Shown one piece after another: positions 4,751-30,073 of a stretch of DNA of 32,000 bases. This stretch comes from Wallemia ichthyophaga EXF-994 (Eukaryota; Fungi; Basidiomycota), in the NCBI RefSeq assembly GCF_000400465.1, contig NW_008806286.1, forward strand, positions 173,865-205,864. The letters are read 5' to 3'. Under the pieces are notes generated by a model. It was not told the origin of the DNA, did not search any database, and saw only the letters and a program-made list of their open reading frames with translations. Positions within the stretch are counted from its first letter, which is position 1; each line of letters begins with the position of its first letter. Position numbers and translations under genes: made by a program.

Positions 4751-4781
4751 GATGGCTATCTATAACGTTATACAAATCCCT

Positions 4782-11570: not shown

Positions 11571-11584
11571 TCTGTGCGTGTTTT

Positions 11585-11738
11585 ACGCGCGTTTTTCTAT
11601 TTCTCGATTCAGTCGGCGTGAAGGAAGATCGGTTACGCGAGTCACTCCGGTTTAATGAAACAAAGTAAAACTTTTTAAAAAGCACAAGCGCAATAATTAC
11701 AGCTTTTTTATTTAAAGCGTGATACAAAAAGCGTGATA
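11585..11738. promoter_or_regulatory. Candidate cis-elements upstream of chitin synthase (MCB-like CGCG boxes and a duplicated 11-mer)
   Basis: ACGCGCGT at 11585-11592, ACGCGA at 11635-11640, and AAAGCGTGATA twice (11714-11724, 11728-11738). Function is inferred only. Confidence 0.3.
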
Positions 11739-12415
11739 TGCTGTGCATGAACGATCCTGGTCTGCTTTTGTGCAAATAAAGGTAGCGAACAGAGTCTCCC
11801 TTGAATCATACTTTGAGCTTGCTCCTTTAATTCCTCCCCTTTCCTCATTGTAAGCTTCAGATCATTAACTGGTCTATCATGCTATGTGCAGGGCGATTGG
11901 AGACGCAGCGACGCTCCTTCCCTTGGTTATACGCAGCTTCAAATGCTGGTGGCGTTTGCACGCAATGCTATAGAAGTTATAAACAAACCAATGTTTCATC
12001 TGGAACAGTCTCTTTCTCCGCTGTATTTCTAGCGTCAAAGATAAGACAACTTGCGACTCCATTGCCAACATTTTCACAACAGTTTCTAATTCAATCCCTT
12101 ATGTATGCCAATTATACTCAATTCTCGCTATTATAGGCCTTATACGATGTAATTCAGCATTTCCCATGTCCTGTGGTCTCAAAGAGAGCCAGGACGTGTA
12201 AATCAAAAAATTATAAGCTCTTACAGATTAGACGGGTTAAAATGACTTGTTCAAACTTGTTTGCTCTTCAGTGGCCCATATCGATTAGCTAGTTCCGACT
12301 TTCAACTAGCCGATGAGGCAGTCGCTGGTATCTTTTCCGCTTTTAAAAACATCAGCTTCCTATTTAAAATAGAAGCTTTCCAATAAAACCTCTTTCACAG
12401 ACCTTCCTCCTTTGT

Positions 12416-13045
12416 TTTGAAATTTCAAAATTCACTTAGTCGACCTTAACCCCTAATTTCAGATTTCGGTTGACCTCCACTTTTCTACACCTTAATGTCT
12501 CCTTCTAATCGTGAAGTGAGGTAGAATAGCAATTTTTCATTTCCTGTAGCCAGGTTTTATAGCTGTAGACGACATATTTTGTAAATCGTTTTTCGCGCTT
12601 ATAGGGCCGTGAAATTAAGACATTTGAGCACTTGCCATTTCTAAAATTTGAGATTTTGTCTTCATCGATAAAGCGCGCCAGATCCTCCATATCTATCCTA
12701 TTGCATGCTCTAGAGCGATTTCGGACTATTGCTTCTGATCGGCGTGCAGGGCGCAATTTGGAGCACGAAAGATCTGATTCTGGCAAAATCATATTTCTCC
12801 TATCCAGAGCTACCTATCGAGCCAGTTTCTTTGGATATCATTAAAACTCGCAAGTCACCATCAGATGAAATAGGTGGTAGAGGAGAATTTCAGATTGTTG
12901 GATATTGAGCGGAGGCTTGAGATGAGGGTGAATTTTGAATTCTGAAGGCATGATAAAATCGATGGTCTTACTAAATTGTTCAAATAGACAATATATGGTA
13001 TCTCTGCATTCGTCTTCTTACTTGGTCATTTGTAGGGTTCCTTGA
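12416..13045 (+). repeat. Copy A of a diverged ~630 bp dispersed repeat (inverted relative to copy B)
   Basis: Colinear with the reverse complement of 28378-29010. Segment 12871-13013 matches 28415-28557 without gaps at 121/143 nt, including an exact 22-mer TATATGGTATCTCTGCATTCGT. Segment 12715-12747 matches at 30/33 and 12416-12445 at 25/30. Confidence 0.9.
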
Positions 13046-13306
13046 AAAAAAATCAATTTGTGGAAATAATTCAGAATACTAGCGTCCGATGTTACTAAAA
13101 GACCTATTCAAAGTGTCCTGTCATCCGGAGTGGGGCAGGGAGGAAGGCAAAGATAAGCAGGTGAGTAAACTGTTGAAAAATTTGTGTTGGAATTGGAAGT
13201 GTACACAAATATTGCCTCAATTTTTTGCTCAGGATGTCAATTAAGAGCATTCATGGAGTTAAGCAGATAGATTCACTAAACCAACGTAAATAAGCAAATT
13301 CACAAA

Positions 13307-14903
13307 TCATACTCTGTTTTTCAATTTCCGCAGGCGCTCTATCTCTTCCTGGGTTGGTTTTGTAGTCGGCTTGCGTGTTTTAGCTTTGTGTGCTTTTGAT
13401 GACAGGTGATTCTCGTACTCCATTCCCTCATTTAAGACGATAGGGTTGTGAGGGTCATTCGTGCATACACCACAGGTAATCTTTCGGTAACCAGTCTCTG
13501 CATTAGATGCAGCTAGTTTCGACTCTTTGCTGAACAGCCTCTCCGCCACTTCCGAGTAGCTTTTAGGGTCGGGCAATGGTTCATCGTTGAGAAACTCTGT
13601 AGATTTTGTTAGCTCAAACTTGTTACCGCACTCAAGCTCACTATCGAGAATGTCTTTAGCAGGGTGTACCACCATCTCATCCCATCTACTAATGTCAGAC
13701 GAGTCAACCATGTATATGTCTATTGATGATGGTACTCCGTCACTGCTGGCACTCTTCTGGTGTGCCACTATCTCAGGTAAAAGTTTATTCTGTATCCATT
13801 TCAATTGCTTCATTGCATATCGTCGAGTGCCTATTTTCATCAGCTCAAGACCTTGTTTGAAAGCCTCATCCCGCTCCTTCTCCGTGGTAGCTTTAAAGTA
13901 AGCGTCAAATTCCTTGTATCCTGTATGCATCTATGTTATAGTGGTTGAAGCATAGAGCAAAGTACCTACCGATGGCTTGGAATAGACCGCGGGTATAGTC
14001 CTGTTGACCATTTGAAATGAAAGCATTCTCAAGCGCACGCAGCTCTTCAATTTCATTCAACAGACCTTGCTTGGGTGCTCTGGTTAGACAGGTGGATCCA
14101 ACGAGCAACACACACACCTCAGTCATCTTCTCAACCCGCCTTTCGAGACGCTTAGACAGCGTATCAGGATCAGTGTACACCCAGAAAACCAAGTTTTTGT
14201 ACTTGGTTTGTGAAAGTGCGTCGATTGACTTGGATGCTTTCTGTTCTTGTTCAATGTCCGAGCGCTTTCTGCCGTTCTCCCAGATAATGTCTAAGCTGCG
14301 TTTGACTTTTCTGAAGTCCCTCAAGTGCCATCTGCTGGCTGTTACAGGGTCAATGAGTGAGAGAATGCGGTGTAAGTGGGAATAGAGCGGGGTGTTGCTG
14401 CTGTCAACGTTGGTGTACTGGGACTCTTTTATTGATGGCAGGGCCATGATAAGATCCTTATCGCTGCTGCTAAGCGGACTGATCATGCTGTAGAAATCGG
14501 CATGTGGATTTGTGGTGAGCGAGTGAGGCTTATCGGAGATGTCGTCCGTCTTAATAAGATTATTCTGGAATATAAGGTGGTGAATATAATAATGAGTTCC
14601 CCCCGCCACGACCGGAAGTGTTTTCTGCGCCGACAGCTTATCAACGAGATAACCAGAGTCAGCGATGAATTGAGGAATTGAGTATTCCTTATCCTTATCT
14701 AGAAATGACATCATATGATGCTTAACTGAGTCCTGCTCACTCTCTGAAATCTTATTTGAGATAACATCCAATCCCTTATACACTTGAATAGAATCTGCGT
14801 TCAAGACGTGTCCATCTCTGTACTTTGCAAGCTGCACAGCTAAGTCTGATTTTCCCGTCGCTGTGGATCCAATTATCGTGATTAGTTTCTTCTTGTTGGT
14901 CAT
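13307..14903 (-). CDS. MOD5: tRNA dimethylallyltransferase (tRNA isopentenyltransferase) with C-terminal zinc finger
   Basis: P-loop GSTATGKS, NADSIQVYKGLDVISNK, VAGGTHYY, RKVKRSL, QAIGYKEF (spliced), TRRYAMKQLKWI, and a C-terminal CxxC...HLSSKAH. Introns at 14070-14117, 13921-13969 and 13597-13641. Confidence 0.94.
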
Positions 14904-14908
14904 CTCCC

Positions 14909-16802
14909 ATGAGAGGTTTAGATAGAGATGACGAGAAGCCAGGCGGCAGGCGTGAGAATGGAAATTATATTAAAATATACGCACTGGTCTTGCTCTCGCT
15001 GGCTTTGGCTGGCTGTACTTACACAAAAATGGTCGTCAACCTCCACAGTTGGCCACCTCATCACTACAAACCTCACTTGGCCTACGGCAAGAATGGCGCT
15101 GTAGCAACGGAATCCAAGGAGTGCTCCGATATGGGCGTTGATATCCTCAAAAGAGGTGGAAACGCAGTCGATTCCGCTGTAACGTCTACTCTCTGTATCG
15201 GCGTTATGAACATGTTCTCATCCGGTATCGGAGGCGGCGGTTTCGCGCTGCATAGAACACCATCCGGAAATATATCATCTCTTGACTTCAGAGAGACTGC
15301 TCCCGCTGCGGCTTACCCATACATGTTCTTCGATTCTCCGTTGCATGCTCAAATAGGCGGTTTGGCTACAGCTACACCTGGAGAATTGGCTGGATTGCAG
15401 GACCTGCATCAGGAGCACGGATCTATGGATTGGTACGATTTGGTTATGCCTGCCGCCCAATTGGCAAAGGGATGGGCTGTGCCGAAGGAGCTCGCTAGGA
15501 GGCTGGACGTGCGTTGCCTTTGTCTGATATTTTATTGCTGACAAGTAGAAAAAGTTGAGTAGTAATTGGATTCTCACAGACCCCGTATGGAGAGAATGGT
15601 TAGCACCAAATGGCACAACATTGGCCGAGGGCGACTGGATAGAGAGACCAGCTTACGCCAAGACATTGGAGACGATCGCAGAGTATGGCGTTGATGCCTT
15701 TTACAAGGTATGTTTGGATCTTGATTTCATTTGCTATCTAACACATCACAGGGCCACATTGGTGACTCATTTGTTGAAACTACAGCCAAATCTGGCGGTA
15801 TTCTCTCCAAATCAGACCTCGAAAGCTACAGCGTTGTCAAGGATCAAGGTCACAGTATGAATCTGCGCGGATTGGATATTCACACTTGCGGGTTTCCGAC
15901 ATCTGGGCCGGTGATGTTATTCATGCTGAACGCACTGGACGAGCTGGATATGTATCCGTCGCGTTCCAACAGCCCCGATGATCTGCACAAATTCATTGAA
16001 GTGATGAAATGTATGTGTCATGTTACGCTCATTCCTCTTGTTAATGCAGCATCCTAAAGTTGGATTTGCAGAACGCACCCGTATCGGCGATGAACCGTTT
16101 ATGAATGACACTGCCCCAATGATGAACATGCTCAACAAGACATACGCTCAGGAAACTGCTGACCTCATCACGGACAAAACGCACACATGGGAGTATTATG
16201 AGCCAGACTTCGAAGTACAGGATACACACGGTACTACCCACCTAACAATTGTAGATGAACAAGGGGGAGTAGTTACACTCACATCAACGATTAACGGCTG
16301 GTTCGGATCCCATGTGCTGGACACAGAAACAGGTATAATACTGAACAACGAAATGGACGACTTTAGTATACCTGGTCATCCTAACATGTTTGGTTTGTGG
16401 CCATCGCCTTACAACCACCCAGAGCCATTCAAGAGACCGTTATCATCGACGGCGCCGACGATTGTTCAGCGGGATGGAAAAATGCTAACTGCGATGGGTG
16501 GCAGTGGAGGTAGTCGTATATTCACCAGCGTATTCCAAACCCTCCTGCACATTCTCGGTGGCTCCGATCCATCATCGGCAATTGAAGCACCGCGAGTCCA
16601 CGATCAGCTTTTCCCACCAATTGCAACATTTGAAAGCGGATTCAGTCCCAGGCTAATCAATGAAATGAAAGAGAGAGGGCACAACACTACAGTGTTTGAT
16701 TTCAACCTCGGCGCGGCGAATGTCCAAGCCATAACGGCAGAAGATGGCACCTTGTTCGCGGCTTCTGATTCACGTAAAAATGGCATTGCAGCTGCTTACT
16801 AG
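14909..16802 (+). CDS. GGT: Gamma-glutamyltranspeptidase (Ntn hydrolase)
   Basis: N-terminal hydrophobic anchor, GAVATE...CSDMGVDILKRGGNAVDSAV, SGIGGGGF, DFRETAP, nucleophile Thr in HGTTHLTIVD, LNNEMDDFS, KRPLSST, GGSGGSRI and SDSRKNG. Three introns near 15509-15550, 15708-15751 and 16012-16059. Confidence 0.94.
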
Positions 16803-16889
16803 ATTGTCAACGACCTTAGTATCGAAATTTATATGTTGTATAAAATACATTATTAGAGTTCTATCAATCTGTGCTTTTGGTGGGTATTC

Positions 16890-17831
16890 TTAAACTTGGA
16901 TAGCAGGGGAAGTCATGGTTACCAGTATGTCCCAGACATATACGAATCCTGTGAGAGTGAGAGGGGGTGAGGAGACAGGTGAAAATCCTCACCGAAAAGA
17001 ATAAATAGGGCAGAGCCACCATATGTGACTGGAGGGAAGATGAGAATAAGACTTGCGAATGAATGTGTCACCGACCTGATTTTATAGATATTCTCGATGC
17101 GACAATGCGTCCGCCAAGCACTGCGACAGCAGTGCACATAGCGTGACCCAAACTAGTACCAAATGCAACAGTTTTCCATCCATGAGCGGCAGCCAAAGCG
17201 ATGGTAGATATTTGGCTACGATCACCCCACTCGCCTAGGAAAGTGAGAGCAAAAGCCTGTACGAAAGCGGGGCTGAATACGGTGATTAATAACTCCCTAA
17301 AAGTGTCAAAAGTTGTCTTTTTGCGTGATTGAGCAGTGGGTTTGGGGAGTTCGTCGTCTTTGTGTTCTATTTCTTGTATCGCTTCTTGCATATCCTCCTC
17401 AACTTCCTTACTGCCACCCTGCATCGCTTTGGCATCCAAGTACATCTTTATTCCAAATACGAGGAATAGGACAGCTGCCATTACTTGTGTATAAGTCTTG
17501 GGGAGGATTGCGGGTAGTATTTGTCCCAGCAGCGCTGAGAGTACAGACATGGCGGCAAGTGCACCAAATGAACCACTAAATACGATTAGTTGCGGGCTTC
17601 TCATAGCGAGAATTGCAGCTGGACGCGTAATTAGGCTGGAGTGCCTGAGCAGTGAACAAGCCCACCGATCAGAAATGTCTTATCACCGACTTCAGAAACG
17701 ACTATCATAGCAATAGACTTGGATTGATTGTTATTGGGATGAATTGTGAGTAAAATTGCACTGACCTGCCATAGTACACTCATATCTATTCCTCCAGTCG
17801 CTGAGCTCTTCGAAGTCGTGGAACAACTCAT
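16890..17831 (-). CDS. GDT1: Gdt1/TMEM165 (UPF0016) Ca2+/Mn2+ transporter
   Basis: Two ExGD(K/R) motifs (SEVGDKTF and GEWGDRSQ) separated by an acidic loop. Four short introns give a continuous frame to TAA at 16890-16892. Confidence 0.92.
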
Positions 17832-17953
17832 TTACGTACTAAGCGCAGTAATTTCAAACAAAAGAATATATTTATACGCATTTGGCGTTTTTTATACACA
17901 TCGTTCTATACTTTGGTATTACTTTACTCCAGTTTCGTAGTGTTTTAGCTGGA

Positions 17954-20900
17954 TTAGCGAGGATCCTCGATCTTGCAAGTGACGAATATCTGAACAGGCG
18001 CGTTAGTATGCCTCACCGCATAAACACCACTTACATCATCAACATCTTTAAATTGTCGCTCGCTATCACCCTCTCTGCGCGATCTACCAACCGACTCTCT
18101 TTCACTCCAGTACTCAATCTGATTGTGGCCATTGTCCGTCTTGGTAGTTGTTGGCATCCACACTCTCTCGCCAGTGTCAGGATCTTGAACTGCGTTGAAC
18201 CATCTAGGCTTGTGTGGAGGTAATTTACCCATTTCTCTCTCTTTACGCGTCCCACGTTGTTTCTCTTCGTTGCGAATCTTGAGATCATTGGCGAGATCAT
18301 ACAGTCCAATTTCAAATGCACGCTGATCTGGTCGAAGTCTACAATCCGTAGATGGCAACCAAGGTCTCAGGTCAGGTCGATCAATTGGTTTCATTGTCGA
18401 TAATCTATCGCCGGGTAAATCGTTCAACGTTATTGCGAATTGCGGTAAATTGAATGGTGTCTTTGGTTTTGCTGAATTCTTCCAAAGCAGCAAGTACTCT
18501 GAAGAATTTTCTACTTGCTGATCGGCATTGATTTCATCAGTCTCGTTGTCAACCTTCTTCGCAACAAGCTGAGTCACCCATCTACCCGCAATCACCCACT
18601 CGCGTTTCTTCTGGCTGTTAGTTACAAATCCTTTTATTTCCTGCCCCTTGCCCCTCCATGGACGAGCCTTGAATGTCAAAGTGCATGACTCGCCAGTGCG
18701 GTGATTAAGGACAACCATATCGCCAAAGTGATCAATAACTGGAGATGCTGTTACAAACCCAGTAACTGCCGTTGTAACCTTTTTCCAACTGTAATGCTCA
18801 ATTATCAACTCTTCTCCAGTAACTTTGCATTTCTCTCTTGGGTATGTTACACCTTCCTTGGCCCAAGCTGCAGGAATCTTCAACTCAGCATGTGCAATAC
18901 CAGTTGGACGAATCTCAAATGAGGTACCCATAAATTTATTTTTTGCATCAACTTCTCCCTTGTAAATCCATCTTGGATTCTCACCCCAACAAGCTGACAT
19001 GGGAGGATGATGGCTGACCTGCTCGCTAAAGTAACGATACTGCTTGTCAAATCTGCAGTACTCAAACGTTTCACCGAGCATTGGATTGAAAGGTTTAGCT
19101 ATTCTGTTCATTGTCGAACTGTAATTGGATGCTGCGAACGCTGCAACGTATGCAACTCTTTTGAGTGGATCTTGACTATTTACTGCAGCATCTAAACACT
19201 CAGTGAACTCCATATCCTCAGCCATTCTTTGAAGCATCGATGTAGGCTCATTGAATGTCACGGGGAATGATATCTTTGTAAGATCTTTGCCAATTGAGCT
19301 TTTTAATACACTCCACAAACTCATTGGCGGACGTTTGTCATCTGATATCGGCATACCATCTCTAAGCTTTTCGTATGGTACGTATGGAGTGAGATCTTCA
19401 ACAGGTGGATCATGCTTCTTTTCTGTCTCGCTGACCTCCTGTGTCATGGGCAAATTACCTTCTTCTACGGCATCGAAAAAGTCATCATCATCATCATCAT
19501 CATCTTCTGAAGATGACGTAACTCTGGCCATGGGAGATGGACGTTGATCATCGTTGATAGGAGCGTGATGAGCAGCTTGTGGAGGTGCACTAACACCACT
19601 TTCATCTTGTTTGTGTGCGGCGTAAATGTTACCTTCTGCTCTAGCAGGTGCTGATTCCTTTGAATCAATAACAGCTGCTTTCATCGGTGGAGAGAGAGTC
19701 GAAGTGCCTGCAGCAGCACCATGTAAATGATGCTTAGTGTGCTTGAGAGCCTTGCGACGATCCTCTTGAGCTTTGTGAACGTTTTCCAATTCGCCTTCAA
19801 CTTTGGCAGTTTCTACGGCGATAGTTGCAATATTCTCCTCCCACAGTTTAGCAGTCTCACGTTCGTGTTGAAGTGACTTTCTGTAGTAAATTTCTCTTTC
19901 ATTAACCATTGATTGCCATCCAGCGATGAGTGAGCTTAGCGTTTGTATTGATCCCTTCAACGCTTCTTTCCGTTCATTGTGCGTGTCGTTATCACCCTCA
20001 AAGTCATCCTTGAGGAAGGTGTTGATAAGCTTTTATGGTGTTAGTTTTTTTTATAGAAATTGGATTGCAATGACTGACACTTTCAGTGGCTTCAATGTGC
20101 GCAGAGAGCTTTTGACCCTCATGTTCAAATGTACCGTTATGTGGAACAGCATTTACATTGTAGCTCTCAACAGTCTCGGCAATAGAGTTTGAGTCAGAAC
20201 CACCCTTCTGACTCTGGAAATCAGCAAGCGAAGTTCTTGAATCGTGGCGGCCATGAATGCTGGAAGACGAGTCATAAAGGAAGGGGGATCTTGGTGCATC
20301 CATAGAAGGATTTTTATCACCATTGTTGATATCTTGCACAGTGAGACTGATTGCCTGCTTCCATGATGCGGCATCGGTTGGATGGTCAGCTCTGACTAAG
20401 AATTTGTTGTTGTGGGAGTGAATTTCGAATTTTCTGCTATCACCGCCTTTGTCTTCCTTCAATTTACCATACTCCAAGTTAATGGCACCTCTAGACAGCT
20501 GCTTGGCTTCATCTTCAGCTGAGAGGTAGTAGTTGAGGATGCCATCTTGGAGGACAAAGTGTCGGTTATGCCAACCAGTGGCGAGATTAACGTACTTCTT
20601 AAGGGTACCTTTCTTATTTCTACTTTGGAAGTTGTGAGCGTTAGGTTTTTGCCTCTCCTGGAGTTTAACGAAGGATTTAATCTGATCGTCTTTGCAAGAA
20701 CTCAAGAGGGACAGGTTACGACTGTCAACGATTGACGAAGATGCATTAGCGTTTTCGAAGGCAGCTTTTAAGAGAGGAAAGTCTTTGTTTGTAACTGCGG
20801 AATGTAAGAGGGTAGAACCGGAGTGGCTGTCAATGTAACTGAGATCGATAATGGGAGAGCAGGGGAGTTTGAGGAGGTCAATGAGGTCCTGGCCAGTATT

Positions 20901-21362
20901 TTTGTCCTGTGAAGACGGCCGTATGTACTCGGCCACTAGGTGACGAAATTCGTCGTTCAACTTGGATTGAGAGTCATGGATAATCAAAGCGCAAGCGTCA
21001 GATTTACAGACTTGGATAGCAGAGCGAGAGTGGTTGTTGCGTATAGAGTCGTTGATGGAAGGGCTGTTGATCAGCAATTCAACTACGTCAGATCTACCGA
21101 GGGAAGAAGCGATGTGGAGTGGAGTGTTGCCATCGGGATCAGTCTCATTAATGTCGATACCGTTAAAAGAGATAATTTGTTGGATTGTGGATGGATTTGC
21201 AGCTTTTACGGCGAGGAGGAGGATTCCTTGGGTGGAATTGGATGAATCCTTTGAATCAGAGGAATCAGAGTGAAGTAATTGAGAAATAGCGTCTGTATCA
21301 TTTGATTGGAAATATTTAAGTAAATTAAACGTTTTCATGGGATCAACTCCCTCGGCGGACAT
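17954..21362 (-). CDS. Oxysterol-binding protein, Osh1/Osh2 type (ankyrin repeats + PH + FFAT + ORD)
   Basis: Ankyrin motifs GNTPLHIA and [10 protein letters not shown] domain ([21 protein letters not shown]...W), FFAT-like [11 protein letters not shown] and the ORD fingerprint EQVSHHPP. Introns at 20030-20078 and 17990-18034. Confidence 0.93.
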
Positions 21363-21391
21363 GATGGCTGTATCCTTCCAAGATTCCAGTC

Positions 21392-22330
21392 ATGTCGAAT
21401 ATACCAGGCAAAGATGGTGAGTTTTTTTATTTCTAGTCTCAAATCAAAGCCGACTATTAGAATCTCAGTCGATCGCAATCAAGAGGCTACTATTTACATC
21501 GGAAATATCCCAGAAGCTGTATCTGACGCTATTATATGGGAATTGATGCTACAAGCTGGTCCTGTCTCTAGTGTCCACCTGCCTAAAGATCGTGTCTCCA
21601 TGTCCCATCAAGGATTTGGTTTCTGCGAGTTTGTCAACGATGAAGACGCTGAGTATGCGTGTAAGATTATGAACCAGATAAAGCTATACGGCAAGCCAAT
21701 AAGAGTTAATAAGGTGGGTAGTTTATTCGGAATCCCCTGTACCCCGCTAAGTACGCTCAAATCCCAGGCATCAACTGATAGGAAGCAAATGGACGTCGGC
21801 GCTAACCTCTTTATCGGTAATCTTGATCCTTCAGTCGATGAGCGCTTGCTCTTTGACACTTTCTCTACATTTGGCCTTATGATGGATGTTGCAAAGGTGT
21901 GTTGCTTTCTTTTATGCCTTTTTTCACCTCTGAAACCTCAAAGATAGCGCGGGATGACACAGGTTACTCAAAAGGCTACGGTTTCATTCAGTACAACGAC
22001 TTTGACAGCTCGGATCAGGCGATAACCGCAATGAATGGTCAATATCTCGTTAACAAGCCACTTACTGTCGATTACGCATTCAAGAAGGACGGAAAGGGTG
22101 AGAGACATGGTACAGACGCAGAGAGAATGCTGGCTGGTGAGGCTAAACGCAACAATGCACTTCCAATGCCTGGCGCTATTCCTGGTCAGCCATTCATGCA
22201 ATATCAGGGTATGTTTGCAGGTGCATTATCTGGTAATCAAGGTGCTATGTCTGCTCAACCACCTGGTGCACCACTGCCATTTGGATTCACACCTGCACCA
22301 CCACCGCCTGCACCTTATGGATTTAGCTAA
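21392..22330 (+). CDS. HSH49: Splicing factor 3B subunit 4 (SAP49/Hsh49), two RRMs plus a short Pro-rich tail
   Basis: [12 protein letters not shown]...ELMLQAGPV...HQGFGFCEF...[14 protein letters not shown]...[11 protein letters not shown]...SKGYGFI. True start is ATG 21392; introns at 21417-21468, 21714-21767 and 21897-21943. Confidence 0.95.
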
Positions 22331-22392
22331 ATTTGTACATGTATATTGATTATTTATTGGAACATTCACCCAGACCGGTATCCAAACCCGGC

Positions 22393-22422
22393 ACCGAAAC
22401 CGAGACCGAGACCGAGACCGAA
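22393..22422 (+). repeat. Hexamer tandem repeat (ACCGAR)x5
   Basis: ACCGAA ACCGAG ACCGAG ACCGAG ACCGAA, read directly. Confidence 0.85.
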
Positions 22423-22478
22423 ATCCCCAACGAGATTTGGAAGGGGGCTGTGAGATAGGTGTATGATTCATATGTGGA

Positions 22479-22518
22479 GGTATGAAATATAAGGTATGAG
22501 GTATGAGATATGAGATAT
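22479..22518 (+). repeat. Degenerate heptamer tandem repeat (GRTATGA)n
   Basis: GGTATGA AATATAA GGTATGA GGTATGA GATATGA GATAT, read directly. Confidence 0.7.
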
Positions 22519-22640
22519 TCGCTTATTCGGTATCTTTTGGATTGTTGTAGTGTCAGTGGCAATGGGAAATTCAACGGCAATGTCAATTAATATATGCAAA
22601 ACAGTCTCAATTGTATTTAATAATGTTTGATAGTATTTAA

Positions 22641-22880
22641 TTACATCCCAGCCATCTCCGTAGAATGGCCGTCGAATGCATGTCTTGAGGCGGTGTAATT
22701 GGCATACAGATAAGCTGCAGCACCAGCAACGATTAAATCCATTATATAAATATACATCTCCACATCCAATCCCGATACGCCTGCCTGCCCGGATGATTCA
22801 GTTACAAAAGATTGCGTGGGCTGAAGTTTGAACAGAGCCAATAGCGGTATTGACGGTAGCAGTGGAATCAGCGTTATCAT
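22641..22880 (-). CDS. Possible small membrane protein (79 aa from ATG 22880), unverified
   Basis: Open frame with two hydrophobic stretches, divergent from OLE1 and followed by an AT-rich 3' region. No family recognised. Confidence 0.25.
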   Translation of the reverse strand: MITLIPLLPSIPLLALFKLQPTQSFVTESSGQAGVSGLDVEMYIYIMDLIVAGAAAYLYANYTASRHAFDGHSTEMAGM

Positions 22881-22996
22881 CCACACGCAAAGTACAGCCG
22901 TATTTATTTGTGTAATTTTTGACTATTTAAGATATTTCATTGGGGATGATAGCTTCTTTAGATTAAACCGCGATCAAGTAAAGGATAATCTCAGCA

Positions 22997-24706
22997 ATGG
23001 CGTTTGAGCAAGTTGTACCGCCACCAGCAGCTACGGCAGCTACTCCAGCTACTCCAGCTTCCCCAGTCTCCTCAATGAGCGCACCAATGTCACCGCCTTT
23101 GACGGACCAGAAGGGCGAATCAGACGCATATATCAGTGACAACGAGCTGCCACCTCCTTTGAACAAGGATACAGATCGTCGGTTGTTTCTTTTCGCCACA
23201 CGAACCATTCTCACATCCCTTGTAGGCCCTGCAGACGCTGATATCGAAGACAACTACGTTCAGAGAACTCTAGCAAATGCAAAGCCTAAGCCACCAATCA
23301 CTTGGTCTACTTTGCTGGGTGAAATTAATTACATTTCGACTACACTTTTACTTGGAGTGCCCATCATTTCCATCTATGGCGCTTTAACTACAGAGTTGAA
23401 ATGGCAAACAGCCCTTTTCAGTGTTCTCTACTATTTCTTCACTGGTTTGGGTATCACTGCTGGATACCACAGATTATGGGCTCATAGAGCATATAACGCT
23501 TCTTTACCCCTTCAATATTTCCTTTGTCTCGCTGGCTCGGGCGCTTGTGAAGGTTCCATCAAGTGGTGGTCTAGAGGCCACAGAGCCCATCACAGATATA
23601 CCGATACCGAACTTGACCCTTACAACGCTCATCGCGGTTTCTGGTACTCTCACGTTGGTTGGATGCTTGTCAAACCACGTATCAAGCCAGGTGTTGCTGA
23701 TATCTCTGATTTGATCAAGAACCCTGTGATTAGATTCCAACAAAAGCATTACGTTAAGTTATTGCTCATCATGGGTTTCATTATTCCAACTGTTTTACCT
23801 GGTTTATTATGGGGTGATTACCGCGGTGGTTACTTTTACGCTGGTGCTGCTCGCTTGTTATTCGTTCACCACTCCACATTCTGTGTAAACAGTTTAGCAC
23901 ATTGGTTAGGTGAACAACCATTCGATGATAAAAACACACCAAGAAATCACTTTATCACTGCTTTATGTACTGTCGGTGAAGGCTACCACAACTTCCATCA
24001 TCAATTCCCAATGGACTTTAGAAACGCTATCAGATGGTACCAATATGACCCAACTAAATGGTTCATTAGCGTTTGTTACGCACTCGGTTTAGCCACGCAT
24101 TTGAAAATGTTCCCATCAAATGAGATTAAGAAGGGTGAATACACAATGGAATTGAAAAAATTGGAAAGAGTTGGTGAAGAAATCAATTGGCCAATTGACT
24201 CGAATGAGTTACCAGTTATTTCATGGACTTCATTTCAACAGCAAGCTAAAGAGAGACCACTGGTTTTGATTCATGGTTTCATTCATGATGTGTCTTCATT
24301 TATGGATGAACACCCAGGTGGAAAGCACCTCTTGTCAAAGCAAGTTGGTAAGGATGGTACAACGGCCTTCTTTGGTGGTGTATACGATCACTCCAATGCC
24401 GCTCACAACCTGCTCGCAATGATGAGAGTTGGTATTCTCGATGGTGGTATGGAAGTGGAGATACTCAAGATAGAAGAAGCACAAGCTAAGAAGAAGGAGC
24501 AAGCGCTGTCTATTGTTAAGGATATAGAGAATGAGCAAGACAGGAAGCGTGCGCACGACGAAGCAATGAAGGATGTCAAGAGGATTGAGCATGAGATGCA
24601 ATTAGCCTTGCTGAGAGCACCACCTCAACAAGTGAGATCGAGGAAGGCCACGGATTACTTCCCACCATCCCAACAACTCAGCATAAAGAAGCAGGCTGAT
24701 AGTTAG
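22997..24706 (+). CDS. OLE1: Delta-9 acyl-CoA desaturase with fused C-terminal cytochrome b5
   Basis: His boxes HRLWAH, HRAHH and HNFHH; GITAGYHR; FCVNSLAH; b5 heme motif HPGG. One uninterrupted 569-aa ORF. Confidence 0.97.
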   Translation: MAFEQVVPPPAATAATPATPASPVSSMSAPMSPPLTDQKGESDAYISDNELPPPLNKDTDRRLFLFATRTILTSLVGPADADIEDNYVQRTLANAKPKPPITWSTLLGEINYISTTLLLGVPIISIYGALTTELKWQTALFSVLYYFFTGLGITAGYHRLWAHRAYNASLPLQYFLCLAGSGACEGSIKWWSRGHRAHHRYTDTELDPYNAHRGFWYSHVGWMLVKPRIKPGVADISDLIKNPVIRFQQKHYVKLLLIMGFIIPTVLPGLLWGDYRGGYFYAGAARLLFVHHSTFCVNSLAHWLGEQPFDDKNTPRNHFITALCTVGEGYHNFHHQFPMDFRNAIRWYQYDPTKWFISVCYALGLATHLKMFPSNEIKKGEYTMELKKLERVGEEINWPIDSNELPVISWTSFQQQAKERPLVLIHGFIHDVSSFMDEHPGGKHLLSKQVGKDGTTAFFGGVYDHSNAAHNLLAMMRVGILDGGMEVEILKIEEAQAKKKEQALSIVKDIENEQDRKRAHDEAMKDVKRIEHEMQLALLRAPPQQVRSRKATDYFPPSQQLSIKKQADS

Positions 24707-24933
24707 CTGTGCTGCTTCTTTTTTGCTATATTCTTGATGTCACTTTAACGTTCTTCTTTTGGCTATCTTTGTCTCTATTTCAACTCACTTCTCTATTTTT
24801 AACGATCTAGAATTGCAAATGTTTTCTTGCTGTGGTTATAACGAAAATCTTCAAATAAATTTCGAAACGTGTATTTGATTTGATATATTGAATTATTACA
24901 TAAAATTACAAATTGTGAAGATGTTGGAGATAA

Positions 24934-25399
24934 TTACTCATCCCAATCGAATTCTGGTTGTTCAGTCTCACCAGCATCTTGGGCCTTGCTAGCAAGAGAA
25001 GCTTGATGATGACGAAATTTAGCCAAATAAATTCTGAGAAGCTGAGTGTAATTCTCAAATCCCAATGCGGACATGGAGTGAATCAGGTCTTCGCCGTTAA
25101 TCGTCTTCCTCTTTTCCAACAAAGATCTCTCTTGAGCTTCAGAGGTGATGAAAGAGATGAACTCAGAAACGCATTCTTGAACAGATTCCTTTGAATCTTT
25201 AGAAATTTTAACGTTATCAGGTAGAGAATTTTTCATAATTCTAGCGACGTTTGCGATCTGAGGTGGGTGAGTGGATATAGGTATAATAGGTGTAAATTAC
25301 AGGGAGGAATCTGTCTTGCTCTTTAAACTCGCCTAATTCCGAATCAGTGAAATTTGGTGTATGCTTTAATGGCTGTATTGGATTAATTGGAATTGACAT
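24934..25399 (-). CDS. HAP3: CCAAT-binding factor subunit Hap3 / NF-YB (histone fold)
   Basis: After splicing intron 25258-25300: [49 protein letters not shown]...[10 protein letters not shown]...LGFENY. Confidence 0.95.
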
Positions 25400-25419
25400 G
25401 ATTGTTGTCCAGAGCAGCC

Positions 25420-26008
25420 ATGTCGAATAAGATCGTTGAAGACGTCTATAGCGGCGTTATAAATGACGTTTCAAAGAACGTTAAATACGATTTTGAGGAG
25501 ATGGGTATTGAAGATATCGTTTTACAGGAATTGCTAAGCGTTGGTCCACGAATTGGATTTATAGGTTGGGCTAATGATTTGTTAGATATGGCAGCATAAA
25601 CTGGATGATAACAATAACAACAATCCATCAAACGATGATAATAACATTCTACAGTCTTTGATTAATCAGCAGCAGTCATTACAACAACAAGCAACTTCTT
25701 CAACCAATTTCAAGCAAGATTCAAATAAAATAAGCCTCGATGATTTCGACGATAATAAGGATTCTAAATCAAATGATAAGATTAAAGAGATGGATAATGA
25801 CGATGACAACGCTATAAACTCAGATCTAGACGACGACGACGACGACGACGATAACGATTTGGATTCTAATGATGATATAGTACTCTGCTTATACGATAAA
25901 GTACAAAGGGTTAAAAACAAGTGGAGAATGCAACTAAAGGATGGTATTATATCGATAAACAACAAAGATTACTTATTCTCAAAGTGCTCTGGTGAATTCG
26001 AGTGGTAA
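25420..26008 (+). CDS. TOA1: Transcription factor IIA large (alpha/beta) subunit
   Basis: N-terminal MSNKIVEDVYSGVINDV...DFEEMG...LQELLSIW (intron 25540-25585) and the conserved C-terminus LCLYDKVQRVKNKWRMQLKDGII...DYLF...GEFEW. Confidence 0.93.
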
Positions 26009-26097
26009 AGCACAATGTACTTAACATATATATCCTCTTTCTCTTTTTCTTTGTTTTTCATTCGATCAGATGATGTTCCACCTCTTCCACCACCTCT

Positions 26098-28014
26098 ATG
26101 ACCAACCCACCCCCGCGACTAATCGCTCTCTCCCAATCCCAGCTAATCCTCATAAATGACGTTAACAAGCTCGATTACGTGGCTTTGAACAAGGATCTCA
26201 ATTTACTCTTCAACTCCCCTAACAACCTCGTCTTGGCTGGTCATGACGGCGTTTTTCAATTTGATCCCTCAATTTCCAATTTATCAAATCTAGTTTTACC
26301 TGTTACCGTTGAGTAGTTAATTTGACGCGTTATTCATCCCTTACTTACCCCCCACAAGTCCCCTTCCTCCCCACATCACATTGAACCAATCACCGCTATT
26401 GACGCGTCTTCAAACACCCTCTACTTTGCTAGAGAACATAATGTTTACGCCTCTGATACTCTCCATAAGCGTATCCAACTCCTTTATCAAGGCCACACTG
26501 GTATAATCCTAGAGCTATCCCTATCAACCCACCAAACCCACCTCGCTAGCTGCTCAAAAGCAGGCGCTTTAATCCTCCACGATTTGATCCAACACTCGTA
26601 CCACATCCTTAATTACTCCCCACGTGAATCCTTATCCTGTTGCGCGTTTTCCCCGCACTTCAATTTCATCCTATGCACTGCTACTGCGTCAGGAACACTC
26701 CTCATACACAACACGTCATTCTTAAATGACCCTCCTTACTTGATCTTCCCCAAGCTTCACCCCTCCCCAATCACCTCCATCGCCTACTCTCACGCTTCAA
26801 AATCTTTAATAGCAACTGTCTCAAAGGACGGCTGGATCGCTGTGATCGATATCGAGACTAAATCCGTAATAAGAGTCATCAACACCACTCACAATCTCAC
26901 TTCACTAGCCTTCGAAGGCGCTCTTCTCGTAGCTGGTACTGCTGATGGTAGAATTTTCATTTACAATTTAAGATCTGGTTCATCTCCACAGACTATTAAC
27001 TGCTCTAGCCATCCCATCGATGCACTCATCTTTCAAAAAGATAAGCGGAAGCCAGTTGGTCTTAAAGCGCGCGATTATGCTGTACATTTCGCTGAGCCGC
27101 TAGTGACTGATCAATCAAAGGATGATCGCTTGACACGTGATAAAAAGAGCAACTCTTCTTCTAACCTCTCAGCGTTAGCGATGAATCCTGCTCGCCATTC
27201 ACTATCCTCTCTCATATCTTCAAGTGCAGTTCCACTACCACCTTCTAAAGATCCACCAAGAGACACACAAAAAGATACACAAAACAAAGAACTTTCAACT
27301 CAAAACCTACCAGTGTACATGCCCTCAAGCGCAGGTGCACTGCGTCCTAACGCCAATCTCACCGATAAAGTTAACTCTGACGAGCAACTTCATACAAGAT
27401 CTAGGCGTACATCTGGCAACGCCGTCTCTCAACCACGTCCAGTCTCTATGGCCAACAGCACAGACAGTCACCTCGCCACAGTTAATGCCTCACTTAATCC
27501 AAATGCTAGTCTACCAAGAAGGCGCAGACATAGCAGCAGATCTGAGAATAGACCGCGCATCGATGAGGTAGATTGGTTTAAGGATCTTCGAGAGAATCGA
27601 GAGAAAGAAAAGACTTCGAAGCAAACAGCTGCGCCGGTTAGTTATCACAACAACAGTTTAAAAAGGAGTGGAAGCAGCAGCTCGTTGCGTCAATACGGCC
27701 ACAATCATAGCCGCACCAATTCCATTGACAGGAACGCTGAGAAACCGGCATCCTTACAATCCACTCAGCCGTCACAAGAGGAAACGCTCAAAAAGTTGAT
27801 TGAAAGCGCCAACGCTCTGAGCTTAAGCACTGAAATTCAGAAAGCTAGGGATGTACTGGAAGTGGGTGTCGTGAATTTTATTTTTAACATACTAACGAAC
27901 AGCTCTCAGGGTGATTACAAAATCAAACTAGAGAGTTACTCTCAAGAGATACGTAAGCTTCGTTCAGAAAATGCACTGCTCAGGAGAGAAAACGATAGAA
28001 TTCGGCGACAATGA
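26098..28014 (+). CDS. WD40-repeat protein with C-terminal coiled coil, NEDD1/GCP-WD-like
   Basis: Repeated WD-like blades (GHTGIILELSL, LHPSPITSIAYS, DGWIAVID, GTADGRIFIYNLR, HPIDAL), a Ser/Arg-rich linker and terminal RKLRSENALLRRENDRIRRQ. Introns at about 26308-26358 and 27862-27909. The NEDD1 assignment rests on architecture only. Confidence 0.65.
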
Positions 28015-28377
28015 ATCGGATTATACCAATAAAAGTGATCTGACATAGTAGGCTAGGATGAGCCTCCTCTTATGTGGATTACATAATAATGTAGTATACA
28101 CTTCAACTCTTTCCCCCCTTTTCCCCAAAACCATAACATCACAAGCGATGAAATATAAGTTATAATAGTCTTAATATCAAACAGTTGTATTATTTTAAAT
28201 TATCAATACACGCAGTCATACACGCATCATAGCATCAATTGATTGAGTTTGACGTAGAAATTTTTAGCTCGCTGCAAGCTATTAGCACCACTTTAAGAGG
28301 GCAGAGAGTTTTGAGCGGTCAACCTATATTTCAGGTAGGTATTCATAATGAGGCTTCGTCAAATTAATTGAATCTGG

Positions 28378-29010
28378 TCAAGGCACCCTGCAAATAACCA
28401 AGTAAAAAAAGATTACGAATGCAGAGATACCATATAATGACAATTTGAACAATTTAACAAGATAATCGATTTTAACACGCCTTCAGCATTCCAAATTCAT
28501 CCTCATATCAGGCCTCCCCTTAATAACCACTAACTTGAAATTCTCCCCTACCACCTAGTTCATCTCAGATGGTGATTTAAAAGTTATGATGATCTCCAAA
28601 TAAAATAGCTTGATAGATAGCTGTGGCTGGGAAGAAAAGCAATTAGCCAGATTTATATCTTTGGTGCACCGAATTGCACTCAGCACGCCGATCGGAAACA
28701 ATGGTCCGAAATCGCTTTAGAGCTCGCTATACGATAGATATGGTCGACTACACGCGATTTATCGATAGGGTGAAACTTCTCTAGCTGAAGGAGACCGCCA
28801 ACACACAAAATTCTCTTTTATTCGGCTTGATAATCGCGATTTACGTTTTATGACTTGGCGTCCACAGGGCTTAATGCCGGCTCCAGGGAAAAAGTAAGGT
28901 CGTTCTGGATTATCGCAAGAGTATTAACTGCGATTTACGCAAAGAAAGGAGGGTCCACCCAGCCCTGAAATCGGGGGTTAGGTCGACCAAATGCATTTCG
29001 ACATTTCAAA
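28378..29010 (-). repeat. Copy B of the diverged ~630 bp dispersed repeat (inverted relative to copy A)
   Basis: Its reverse complement aligns colinearly with 12416-13045 (see copy A). It lies in the 1.4 kb gap between two convergent genes. Confidence 0.9.
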
Positions 29011-29424
29011 TAATGGGAGTGTGAAGGCGATTAAGGCTGCTTTGGAATCTCAGAAAGTATTTTATTTGGAATTTTAATTTTAGATACCGCTTTATACTCC
29101 CTGAAACATGTGACATCTATCAGGACAAGTACAAAGCACATAACTAAGCCATTCATCATAGACAAACTATAATTTATCGCAAAATCAGTCGCTACTGGAG
29201 GATACCAATATTACTCAATTTTGCATTAACTACAGTGCTATTGGAAATACGCAATTGAGCATGCCATTCTGTGACCACATCACTACTTGAATTCATGCAT
29301 ATCGCGCACTGGAAGTCGTTCGTAAGTCGAACTCAAGATAGTTAAACTGTTGAATATAAGTAAAGCGTTTTATGAAAATCATCTATACAAGCGTCATATA
29401 TCTAGTCGATCTCAACCACAAGGC

Positions 29425-30073
29425 TTATCTATCAAGGTTGATGGAATCCTAGTATATCTGTTAGCAGTAATCTAATATTTCACACCCAGCCCACCTTGAA
29501 CTTGCTCTTCAGATGCACCTTCAATTCCGACATACTCCTCTCACAATCCTCAGCTCGGGATTTGAGTCCATCGATAATGGCGTCCAGAGCGTTGCAATCG
29601 GCCTCAATTTGCGACTGAGCTTTCTCTAGACTTATGTACACGAAAGAGTCACCAAGTTTGTATCTTTAAGAAGAGTAAGGACGTTATTTGGTACACAGCT
29701 CGGTTACTCACAACACGGGCTGATCTTCGTCAGCCAATTCCAATTCCATACTCAAGTCATCTATCTGCTCTCTTTCAGTCTGTGCGCGCTCTTTGTTAGC
29801 TTTGTGATTACCAGTGATAGCAGCTGCATACTTTTTTATCTGTCAACGCTTCTTCAATGTCTTCGAGGCGTTTGTTGTACTTTGAGAATTCATTTATTCT
29901 CGACTGGTCCTCTAATTGCCTGTGAGTGGAGTGTATTGAATATAAGTATCACTACTAACGCCATGTAACTTCCTCTGAAGCGTCTTCTTGGTTTTTCTCG
30001 AGCTGTTGCACAATGTAAACACAATGTGGCTCTTTACTGTACGGCAAATCCTCACCATACTCAGCGATGACAT
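29425..30073 (-). CDS. GIM3: Prefoldin subunit 4 (absent from the supplied ORF track)
   Basis: Five canonical introns splice to MSSLSMLEKNQEDASEEVTWQDQSRINEFSKYNKRLEDIEE...IDDLSMELELADEDQPVLYKLGDSFV...MSELKVHLKSKFKDSINLDR*, which matches the PFDN4 pattern. Confidence 0.9.

What the first reader, a model, noticed from the sequence alone, without database searches (positions are those of the whole stretch)
12416..13045. Unexplained ~630 bp non-coding element present in two diverged copies
Seen: 12416-13045 is colinear with the reverse complement of 28378-29010 and has nearly the same length (630 vs 633 bp). Best blocks are 121/143 without gaps (12871-13013 vs 28415-28557), 30/33 and 25/30; the middle third is more diverged. 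Most intergenic gaps here are 5-220 bp, and these copies fill the only two gaps over 1.3 kb. I found no shared intact ORF, no clear codon-position bias (10/8/4 mismatches over the three positions in the best block) and no obvious TIRs or TG..CA LTR ends. Inference: a non-autonomous mobile element relic, a multicopy structured ncRNA, or a chromosome-function element such as an origin or centromere-associated repeat. The uneven conservation hints at constraint.
Basis: partly seen in the sequence, partly recalled or inferred. Interest (0 to 1): 0.78.

Follow-up and report, generated by a model that had tools for sequence, protein, structure and literature searches.

The report
Old inverted repeat bracketing a gene block
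Two decayed, inverted copies of one ~0.7-kb non-coding sequence sit at the two ends of a 15-kb block of housekeeping genes in the salt-loving fungus Wallemia ichthyophaga; they look like a neutral leftover of an old duplication or transposition, not a working gene or RNA.

Summary
The window is Wallemia ichthyophaga EXF-994, scaffold KE007236.1. Copy A (about 12390-13080, +) and copy B (about 28338-29035, -) are homologous and colinear (blastn E 3.5e-92). They fill the two largest spacers in the window (1736 and 1411 bp) and occur in every W. ichthyophaga assembly examined.

Both spacers are lineage-specific expansions. In W. mellicola the same gene pairs lie 100 and 59 bp apart. Another Wallemia contig has about 100 bp at site A. 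W. hederae has no element at site B.

I found no shared ORF, no protein or Pfam relative, no Rfam match, no unusual RNA folding and no covariation above shuffled controls. There are no LTR, TIR or poly-A hallmarks.

The uneven conservation is significant (K2P 0.22 inner half, 0.59 outer half, p = 1e-8). It does not look like constraint: the element is as polymorphic among strains as other spacer DNA, and the nearest relative shows no similarity to it.

The arms bracket a 15.3-kb block of nine housekeeping genes and lie downstream of its two outward-facing end genes. In the nearest relative, assembly contigs break at both equivalent positions and share a 32-nt repeat node, so that block may also be repeat-flanked or inverted.

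Best reading: an inert inverted low-copy repeat, of transposon or breakpoint-duplication origin, partly re-homogenised by gene conversion. Interest is modest.

The parts
12390..13080 (+). Copy A of the repeat (arm next to the 3' end of the tRNA isopentenyltransferase gene).
   Evidence: No gene is annotated here in the reference or in 6 strains shown.
28338..29035 (-).
   Evidence: No gene is annotated here in 6 strains shown.
12693..13035 (+). Inner, better-conserved half of copy A. It pairs with 28388-28737 of copy B at 79-81% identity (K2P 0.22).
   Evidence: The longest perfect match between arms is 22 nt, at 12992-13013.
12395..12692 (+). Outer, more diverged half of copy A. It pairs with 28738-29030 of copy B at about 57-60% identity (K2P 0.59), is colinear and has few gaps.
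   Evidence: The difference from the inner half has chi-square p = 1e-8.
11571..13306 (.). Expanded spacer at site A, from the chitin synthase ATG to the IPPT stop (1736 bp). Only about 11587-11670 aligns to the ~100-bp ancestral spacer.
   Evidence: W. mellicola L012 has a 100-bp spacer. Wallemia sp. L015 has about 100 bp. Ancestral part located. Six-frame Pfam scan empty.
28015..29425 (.). Expanded spacer at site B, from the WD40 stop to the prefoldin stop (1411 bp). 28047-28217 is a conserved WD40 3' flank and 29346-29425 is the conserved prefoldin 3' flank.
   Evidence: W. mellicola L002 has a 59-bp spacer. W. hederae L001 has about 540 bp between the WD40 stop and the start of prefoldin homology, with no element. 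Alignment to the nearest relative.
13081..28337 (.). The bracketed 15.3-kb block: IPPT(-), gamma-glutamyltranspeptidase(+), GDT1(-), oxysterol-binding protein(-), RRM protein(+), delta-9 desaturase(+), NFYB-like(-), TFIIA and WD40(+). Its two end genes point outwards into the arms.
   Evidence: Pfam scans. Annotation of the same scaffold and of strains.
28199..28236 (+). Left copy of a short motif (ATCTATACACGC-like, here degenerate and partly tandem) that flanks the site-B insert as a direct repeat. The right copy is at about 29378-29399.
   Evidence: The motif is single in W. mellicola and occurs twice (exact 13-mer, 247 nt apart) in W. hederae.

Best explanation
The pair is an old, now inert, inverted low-copy repeat of non-coding DNA.

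One ~0.7-kb sequence came to lie in inverted orientation in two spacers that were originally only about 60-100 bp long. This happened in the W. ichthyophaga lineage after it separated from W. mellicola and W. hederae-like species. The two arms bracket a 15.3-kb block of nine housekeeping genes. Each arm lies just downstream of an outward-facing end gene, with the same polarity towards it.

Shown: the homology, the lineage-specific spacer expansion, the absence of coding or RNA-structure signal, the two-step divergence, and strain polymorphism no lower than in neighbouring spacer DNA.

Inferred: the arms arose in one duplicative event. This was either ectopic copying or breakpoint duplication linked to rearrangement of the block, or two nearby insertions of one mobile element. 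The timing was roughly that of the split from the nearest relative, because the outer-half K2P of 0.59 matches the 0.56 measured at fourfold sites between the two species. The inner 350 bp was later re-homogenised once by gene conversion between the arms (K2P 0.22).

With at most 22 nt of perfect match left, the arms are probably too diverged to recombine today. All assemblies examined have the same orientation.

Such arms are the kind of structure that causes, or is left by, inversion of the enclosed block. The nearest relative's assembly graph suggests that its block is also flanked by an inverted repeat, and possibly inverted.
For: - Homology and extent.
- Organism and scaffold: (L014 is 100% identical to the window).
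- Empty or small ancestral sites.
- No gene annotated in either spacer in the reference or in the strains shown.
- No coding signal. Six-frame comparison shows stops in copy B wherever copy A has ORFs. The 95-aa ORF matches only itself among 5.8 billion proteins and 1.84 billion representatives. The Pfam six-frame scan is empty.
- No RNA signal.
- Two-tier divergence: K2P 0.585 vs 0.224, p = 1e-8, ts/tv about 1, no CpG depletion.
- Neutral yardstick between species: K2P 0.56 at fourfold sites.
- Polymorphism: 8 sites in 690 nt (copy A) and 10 in 700 nt (copy B). Other spacer DNA shows about 1.0-1.2% and flanking coding DNA 0.2-0.8%.
- Block geometry.
- Nearest relative (Logan run SRR25399871). 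The last 28 nt of contig L011 equal the first 28 nt of contig L009. With k = 31 this implies a 32-nt node with two entries and two exits. The 15,653-bp contig that holds L011 ends 170-200 nt past the IPPT stop. By coordinate mapping it starts about 230-360 nt past the WD40 stop. Those are the positions of the inner edges of the W. ichthyophaga arms (227 and 324 nt).
Against: - Gene order at both junctions in W. ichthyophaga is the ancestral one (IPPT next to chitin synthase, WD40 next to prefoldin, as in W. mellicola and W. hederae). No inversion is needed to explain this genome.
- The repeated sequence has no recognisable source in the ancestral spacers, which argues against a simple staggered-break duplication.
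- Each spacer holds much more new DNA (about 1.6 and 1.1 kb) than the shared 0.7 kb.
- The nearest relative's junction DNA shows no similarity to the element. A shared origin of the two species' repeats is therefore unproven.
- I could not read the left end of its 15.6-kb contig, nor decide the orientation of its block.
- Genome-wide copy number could not be measured with these tools. A dispersed transposon family is not excluded.
- The polymorphism comparison rests on few sites.
Confidence: 0.5

Rival explanations
1. The copies are two independent (perhaps local-hop) insertions of one non-autonomous transposable element. The better-conserved half is the end that the family needs in cis for mobilisation, so the unevenness reflects family-level conservation and not host constraint. 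The position at the ends of a gene block is then chance, or reflects that few spacers in this compact genome tolerate insertions.
For: Both copies are lineage-specific insertions into tiny spacers. The size (~0.7 kb), non-coding nature and neutral polymorphism fit. The genome paper reports about 85 kb of DNA-transposon sequence in a genome with 1.67% repeats (PMC3849046). The site-B insert is flanked by a direct duplication of a motif of at least 13 nt, which resembles a long target-site duplication.
Against: No terminal inverted repeats, no TG..CA ends and no poly-A tail shared by both copies. No significant target duplication at site A. No transposase or RT relic. No third copy in the 41 kb of W. 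ichthyophaga DNA examined, and no related ORF in any public assembly. The motif duplication at site B also exists in W. hederae, which lacks the element, so it predates the element. This model leaves unexplained the equal polarity towards the block's end genes and the relative's contig breaks at both block ends.
Confidence: 0.3
2. It is a functional non-coding element present twice. Candidates are a pair of long or structured ncRNA genes, a chromatin boundary pair insulating the block (as IR-L/IR-R do at the fission-yeast silent mating-type region), a shared 3' terminator module for the two end genes, or a replication-origin or centromere-associated repeat.
For: Uneven conservation with islands of identity. 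Symmetric placement downstream of both outward-facing end genes. Possible repeat at the same positions in the nearest relative.
Against: No Rfam match. No folding or covariation signal. Polymorphism is as high as in other spacer DNA and highest in the best-conserved block of copy B. The element is absent from W. mellicola, W. hederae and another Wallemia contig at the same sites. There is no sequence conservation with the nearest relative, although neutral divergence (K about 0.56) would still allow a constrained block to be detected. There is no AT-rich or otherwise unusual composition.
Confidence: 0.08
3. It is a decayed pair of duplicated orphan protein-coding genes, or one live small gene in copy A and its pseudogene in copy B.
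For: Copy A has a 95-aa ATG ORF (12505-12792, minus strand) and a 58-aa open stretch in the conserved block.
Against: The same frames are broken by stops and frameshifts in copy B. Mismatches show no codon-phase bias (8/10/4). The ORF matches only itself in two exhaustive protein searches; the single other hit is a repeat-summed artefact on an ankyrin-like protein. No gene was called in the RNA-seq-supported reference annotation or in any strain.
Confidence: 0.05
4. It is an active flip/flop switch: the arms still recombine and invert the 15-kb block, as in the Ogataea MAT region or the Saccharomyces chromosome XIV flip/flop region.
For: An inverted repeat flanks a block of similar size (15 kb against 19 and 24 kb in PMC5720833 and PMC9731477). 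The relative's assembly graph is compatible with either orientation.
Against: The arms are only 57-79% identical, with a longest perfect match of 22 nt, whereas known flip/flop repeats are kept nearly identical. All W. ichthyophaga assemblies retrieved have the same orientation at both junctions. The block holds housekeeping genes and no mating-type genes.
Confidence: 0.03

Closest known systems
Inverted duplications at inversion breakpoints (staggered-break model; Ranz et al. 2007, PMC1885836)
   Same: Two inverted copies of otherwise non-repetitive sequence sit exactly at the two ends of a chromosomal segment. They are low-copy, non-transposon-like and of sub-kilobase to kilobase size.
   Different: In that model the duplicated DNA comes from the ancestral breakpoint sequence and the enclosed segment is inverted. 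Here the segment has the ancestral orientation and the repeat has no source in the 60-100-bp ancestral spacers.
Saccharomyces chromosome XIV 24-kb flip/flop region with homogenised 4-kb inverted repeats (Salzberg et al. 2022, PMC9731477)
   Same: A block of housekeeping genes of similar size is bracketed by inverted repeats. Gene conversion between arms acts there and is inferred here. There is possible positional conservation of the repeat in a related species together with sequence turnover.
   Different: There the arms are almost identical, contain expressed sporulation genes and invert recurrently. Here the arms are 57-79% identical and non-coding, and every isolate has the same orientation.
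Flip/flop mating-type regions of methylotrophic yeasts (Ogataea polymorpha, 19 kb; PMC5720833)
   Same: Inverted repeats flank a block of about 15-20 kb.
   Different: There are no MAT genes in this block, the arms are highly diverged and there is no sign of switching. W. ichthyophaga is reported to lack most mating and meiosis genes (PMC3849046).
Relics of non-autonomous transposons (solo LTRs, MITEs, SINEs)
   Same: Sub-kilobase, non-coding, lineage-specific insertions in spacers, decaying neutrally.
   Different: None of the structural hallmarks is present and only two copies are known.
IR-L / IR-R boundary repeats of the fission-yeast silent mating-type region (my own knowledge, not checked here)
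   Same: Inverted repeats bracket a domain of 15-20 kb.
   Different: Those arms are identical 2.1-kb repeats that bound heterochromatin. Here the arms are diverged and enclose expressed housekeeping genes. No chromatin data were available.

Membership tests
LTR retrotransposon solo LTR | 5'-TG...CA-3' ends at the limits of homology, flanked by a 4-6-bp target-site duplication | tested here: not met
   Homology continues beyond the only candidate TG (12418) and beyond the candidate CA. The 6 nt after it (GAATAC) are shared by both copies. No matching flanks.
MITE / TIR DNA transposon | Terminal inverted repeats at both ends of each copy, plus a short TSD | tested here: not met
   The repeat finder on both spacers finds no terminal pair. 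The only pair touching an end (12417-12435 / 12928-12946) is internal and poorly kept in copy B.
SINE / non-LTR retrotransposon | tRNA, 5S or 7SL-derived head with Pol III boxes, an A-rich or simple-repeat tail, and a variable TSD | tested here: not met
   No tRNA-like sequence and no Rfam match. The A8 run at 13045-13052 is in copy A only. No RT relic.
Helitron | 5'-TC ... CTRR-3' ends with a 3' hairpin, inserted between A and T | tested here: inconclusive
   The ends of homology are fuzzy, especially the outer one. No CTRR end or conserved subterminal hairpin was seen by eye. No formal scan was run.
Dispersed repeat family (any transposon) | More than two copies in the genome | not testable with these tools
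   No fungal whole-genome DNA search was available. There are two copies in the 41 kb examined. A metagenome scan with the conserved 21-mer gave only a chance bacterial match.
Structured ncRNA gene | Match to a known family, or folding energy and covariation above background | tested here: not met
   Rfam 0 hits at gathering threshold and only E>0.06 noise. MFE z-scores -2.1 to +1.5. Alifold z -1.4 and +0.9, with compensatory pairs 5 and 3 against 4.1 and 2.8 in shuffles. Only two diverged sequences were available, so power is low.
Protein-coding gene or pseudogene pair | Shared reading frame, codon-phase bias of substitutions, homologues elsewhere | tested here: not met
Inversion-breakpoint inverted duplication (staggered breaks) | Enclosed segment inverted relative to the outgroup, and the duplicated DNA single-copy at one breakpoint in the outgroup | tested here: not met
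   Junction gene order equals the outgroups. The element is absent from the outgroup spacers. The orientation in the nearest relative could not be resolved.
Flip/flop invertible region | Near-identical inverted repeats, and both orientations present among isolates | tested here: not met
   57-79% identity with a longest perfect match of 22 nt. A single orientation in all assemblies retrieved.
Centromere / replication origin element | Binding of CENP-A or ORC; AT-rich or otherwise distinctive sequence; positional conservation | not testable with these tools
   Composition is unremarkable (GC 0.385 and 0.414 against 0.432). The element is absent at the same sites in three other Wallemia lineages. 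No ChIP data.

The most novel reading that the evidence does not exclude
The W. ichthyophaga clade may carry a positionally conserved inverted-repeat pair around this 15-kb housekeeping block. Its arms would turn over in sequence but be re-created or re-homogenised within each species, and the block would invert from time to time. That would be a basidiomycete counterpart of the Saccharomyces chromosome XIV flip/flop region, in a fungus thought to be asexual.

The supporting points are as follows. The nearest relative's 15.6-kb contig spans almost exactly the inter-arm block. It ends on a 32-nt node shared with the prefoldin-side contig. The older tier of arm divergence equals the species divergence.
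Probability: 0.12. Interest if true: 0.6.

Novelty: new member of a known kind. Interest (0 to 1): 0.3.

Why it matters
W. ichthyophaga has one of the most compact fungal genomes known: 9.6 Mb, 1.67% repeats, about three quarters coding (PMC3849046). Kilobase-sized non-coding spacers are therefore rare and worth explaining.

These two turn out to be lineage-specific expansions that hold an old inverted duplication. This gives a dated example of how such genomes gain spacer DNA and of gene conversion between diverged arms. It also marks a candidate rearrangement hotspot: the block ends coincide with assembly-graph breaks in the nearest relative.

The work also removes a candidate. There is no sign of a new RNA gene, centromere or origin here. 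Unless block inversion in the relative is confirmed, this is an ordinary structural relic.

Tried and rejected
- **Known RNA family.** Rfam at gathering threshold over the whole window, and at E<=10 over both spacers, gave nothing credible. No tRNA was found.
- **Structured RNA.** MFE z-scores and alifold against column-shuffled controls showed no signal on either strand. An earlier folding script timed out.
- **Coding.** Six-frame comparison, Pfam on ORFs and on all six frames of spacer A, a 5.8-billion-protein search and an exhaustive phmmer search were all negative. The only foreign hit, P0153, is a summed score over about 25 ankyrin-like repeats matching 24 residues, in the part of the ORF that copy B does not share.
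- **Further copies.** The only related ORF in public assemblies (P0121, L010) is copy A itself from another sample. A metagenome scan with the conserved 21-mer hit a bacterial signal-peptide region by chance.
- **Transposon ends.** No TIR or LTR was found. A suspected long target duplication at site A was not significant (second-best local alignment p about 0.1).
- **Hidden homology with the nearest relative's junction DNA.** blastn, nhmmer with --max, and Smith-Waterman against shuffles were all at background.
- **RIP-like mutation.** ts/tv is about 1 and CpG observed/expected is 0.86-1.04, so there is no signature.
- **Gene-conversion footprints in strain SNPs.** Alleles often equal the paralogue's base, but that is expected for ancestral alleles, so the result is uninformative.
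- **Literature.** No description of this repeat or of an inversion here was found in the Wallemia genome paper.

Full report
**What the window is.** The largest ORFs carry eukaryotic, fungal domains: chitin synthase, oxysterol-binding protein, a delta-9 desaturase with cytochrome b5, KH, WD40 and others. The alpha/beta-hydrolase at 30167-31447 is 100% identical to a Wallemia ichthyophaga protein. Locus L014, from the EXF-994 reference scaffold KE007236.1, is 100% identical to window 3307-24903. The genome is known to be very compact: 9.6 Mb, 1.67% repeats, about three quarters coding (PMC3849046).

**The observation.** The repeat finder recovered the inverted pair independently. blastn gives a 389-nt HSP at 78.9% (E 3.5e-92) and a 71-nt HSP at 76% (E 6e-7).
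- A global alignment extends homology slightly, to about 12390-13080 and 29035-28338.
- Identity is about 57% over 12395-12692, about 79% over 12693-13035 and 66% to 13080. Outside it equals the 33% +/- 5% of shuffled controls.
- In the public annotation the two spacers measure 1736 and 1411 bp. The next largest are 666 and 533 bp.
- Both copies are present, at 99.1-99.8% identity, in the reference and in every other W. ichthyophaga assembly retrieved. No annotator called a gene in either spacer.

**Both spacers are lineage-specific expansions.**
- In W. mellicola, IPPT and chitin synthase are 100 bp apart (L012), and WD40 and prefoldin are 59 bp apart (L002).
- A contig of another Wallemia species (L015, about 73% DNA identity) has about 100 bp at site A.
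- W. hederae (L001) has about 540 bp between the WD40 stop and the start of prefoldin homology, with no similarity to the element.
- At site A only about 11587-11670 aligns with the ancestral spacer.
- About 1.6 kb (site A) and 1.1 kb (site B) are therefore new DNA. Only 0.7 kb of it is shared between the sites.

**It is not a gene or a recognisable RNA.**
- Wherever copy A is open, copy B has stops or frameshifts.
- The 95-aa ORF of copy A matches only itself in a 5.8-billion-protein search. That hit (P0121, L010) is copy A from another sample. An exhaustive phmmer search of 1.84 billion representatives gave the same result. The single foreign hit is a repeat-summed artefact on an ankyrin-like protein.
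- All six frames of spacer A are empty in Pfam at E<=1, apart from one sub-threshold match (E 0.0099, 16.8 bits against a cut-off of 26.2) that I take as noise.
- Rfam gives nothing at gathering threshold and only noise at E<=10. There is no tRNA-like sequence.
- Folding energies of both halves, both strands and both copies lie within -2.1 to +1.5 SD of dinucleotide shuffles, without agreement between copies.
- The alifold consensus energies (z -1.4 and +0.9) and the counts of compensatory pairs (5 and 3) match column-shuffled alignments (4.1 and 2.8). With only two diverged sequences this test is weak, but it gives no support.

**It is not a recognisable transposon.** There are no terminal inverted repeats, no TG..CA ends at the limits of homology and no shared A-tail. 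No significant target duplication exists at site A, and there is no transposase or RT relic. I could not search the whole genome. No third copy exists in the 41 kb of W. ichthyophaga DNA I held. A metagenome scan with the best-conserved 21-mer found only a chance bacterial match.

**The uneven conservation is real but does not look like constraint.**
- The inner half has K2P 0.224 and the outer half 0.585 (chi-square p = 1e-8). Transitions and transversions are about equal and there is no CpG or RIP-like signature.
- Among the reference, six strains shown at each site and one further sample for copy A, the element has 8 variable sites in 690 nt (copy A) and 10 in 700 nt (copy B). The remaining spacer DNA shows about 1.0-1.2% and flanking coding sequence 0.2-0.8%.
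- The best-conserved block of copy B carries 8 variants in 360 nt.
- Neutral divergence to the nearest relative, a species known only from Logan run SRR25399871, is K2P 0.56 at fourfold sites. A constrained block should still be detectable at that distance, yet blastn, nhmmer and Smith-Waterman find nothing there.
- The simplest reading is two ages. The duplication is about as old as that species split (0.585 against 0.56). A later gene-conversion event re-homogenised the inner 350 bp.

**Geometry.** The arms bracket 13081-28337. This block holds IPPT(-), GGT(+), GDT1(-), OSBP(-), RRM(+), OLE1(+), NFYB-like(-) and TFIIA/WD40(+). The two end genes point outwards. Each arm starts 227 or 324 nt beyond their stop codons, with the same polarity (better-conserved half first). 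Gene order across both junctions is the ancestral one.

**The nearest relative.**
- Its contig L011 runs from OLE1 to IPPT and ends 170-200 nt after the IPPT stop. Its contig L009 begins 1355 nt before the prefoldin 3' flank.
- The last 28 nt of L011 are identical to the first 28 nt of L009. With k = 31, two contigs that overlap by 28 nt and not 30 imply a 32-nt node with at least two entries and two exits, that is, an exact repeat. This step is my inference from how de Bruijn contigs end.
- L011 is positions 3859-15653 of a 15,653-bp contig, and its position 2 maps to window 24513. The contig should therefore begin about 230-360 nt beyond the WD40 stop.
- The relative's contig thus spans almost exactly the inter-arm block, with breaks at both equivalent inner edges.
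- This fits an inverted repeat around the same block in that species. The graph is equally compatible with a colinear and an inverted block. I could not fetch the contig's left end, so the point is suggestive and not shown.

**Interpretation.** The shown facts fit an old, neutral, inverted low-copy repeat. Its origin is open, and the two candidate origins are not exclusive.
- One option is a local inverted duplication tied to rearrangement of the block, as in the inverted duplications at Drosophila inversion breakpoints (PMC1885836).
- The other is two insertions of a non-autonomous element whose hallmarks have eroded.
- The closest functional analogues are the flip/flop regions of Saccharomyces chromosome XIV (PMC9731477) and of Ogataea (PMC5720833). 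They differ in having near-identical arms and both orientations in nature.
- Here the arms share at most 22 nt of perfect match, and all isolates have one orientation. I therefore regard the repeat as inert today.

**Verdict.** The mobile-element option survives as a rival. The structured-RNA, constraint, origin and centromere options are not supported. It is a new instance of a known kind of structure, and interest is modest (0.3). The one thread that could raise it is confirmation that the block is repeat-flanked or inverted in the sister species.

Noticed in passing
window 28199-28236 and 29378-29399; L001 9001 and 9248; L002 9311; L009 1394: A motif (T)ATCTATACACGC lies once in the 59-bp WD40-prefoldin spacer of W. 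mellicola. It occurs twice, as a direct repeat flanking the inserted DNA, in W. hederae (exact 13-mer, 247 nt apart) and in W. ichthyophaga (left copy degenerate and partly tandem, TRF period 12 at 28206-28231). This looks like a long target duplication or a duplicated 3'-end signal. It predates the 0.7-kb element.
   Followed up: partly
L011 end (11768-11795) and L009 start (1-28): Two contigs of the nearest relative (Logan run SRR25399871) share an exact 28-nt terminal overlap. This implies a 32-nt repeated node at the position equivalent to the inner edge of the repeat. The block orientation in that species is unresolved.
   Followed up: partly
L002 and L012 (W. mellicola) against window 13307-28014: The 15-kb block is not one unit in W. 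mellicola. GGT-IPPT-chitin synthase lies next to Mus7/Bud13. RRM-OLE1-TFIIA-WD40-prefoldin lies next to an RNase PH/Bax1-I gene on another contig, without GDT1-OSBP between them. An older rearrangement therefore joined these parts in the W. ichthyophaga/W. hederae lineage.
   Followed up: no
window 28404-28437: There is a cluster of five strain variants (one indel, four substitutions) within 34 nt. It lies at the T-rich stretch next to the longest perfectly conserved run of the repeat in copy B. It may reflect a slippage-prone tract or a small conversion or mutation cluster.
   Followed up: partly
window 13167-13223: A 21-nt imperfect hairpin lies about 85-140 nt downstream of the IPPT stop. 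It gives a sub-threshold Rfam mir-15 match (20.6 bits against a gathering score of 57.3, E 0.06). This is most likely chance or a 3'-end hairpin.
   Followed up: no
L003, L018, L020, L012 gene tables: Several public gene models fuse neighbouring genes across tiny spacers: OSBP+GDT1 (1313 aa), chitin synthase+ATP synthase delta+ATP11 (1757 aa) and TFIIA+WD40 (728 aa). The IPPT model differs between the reference (484 aa) and the strains (515 aa). These are probably annotation artefacts of a very compact genome.
   Followed up: no
window 22393-22518: Short tandem repeats (ACCGAG x4.8; a 7/14/21-nt unit GAGATAT x6) lie in the 666-bp spacer upstream of the delta-9 desaturase gene, the third-largest spacer of the window.
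   Followed up: no
L009 1-1355: In the nearest relative, 1.3 kb of DNA upstream of the prefoldin 3' flank has no similarity to anything in the window or to the other Wallemia loci. It has no ORF longer than 82 aa. This is that species' own unexplained spacer expansion at site B.
   Followed up: partly
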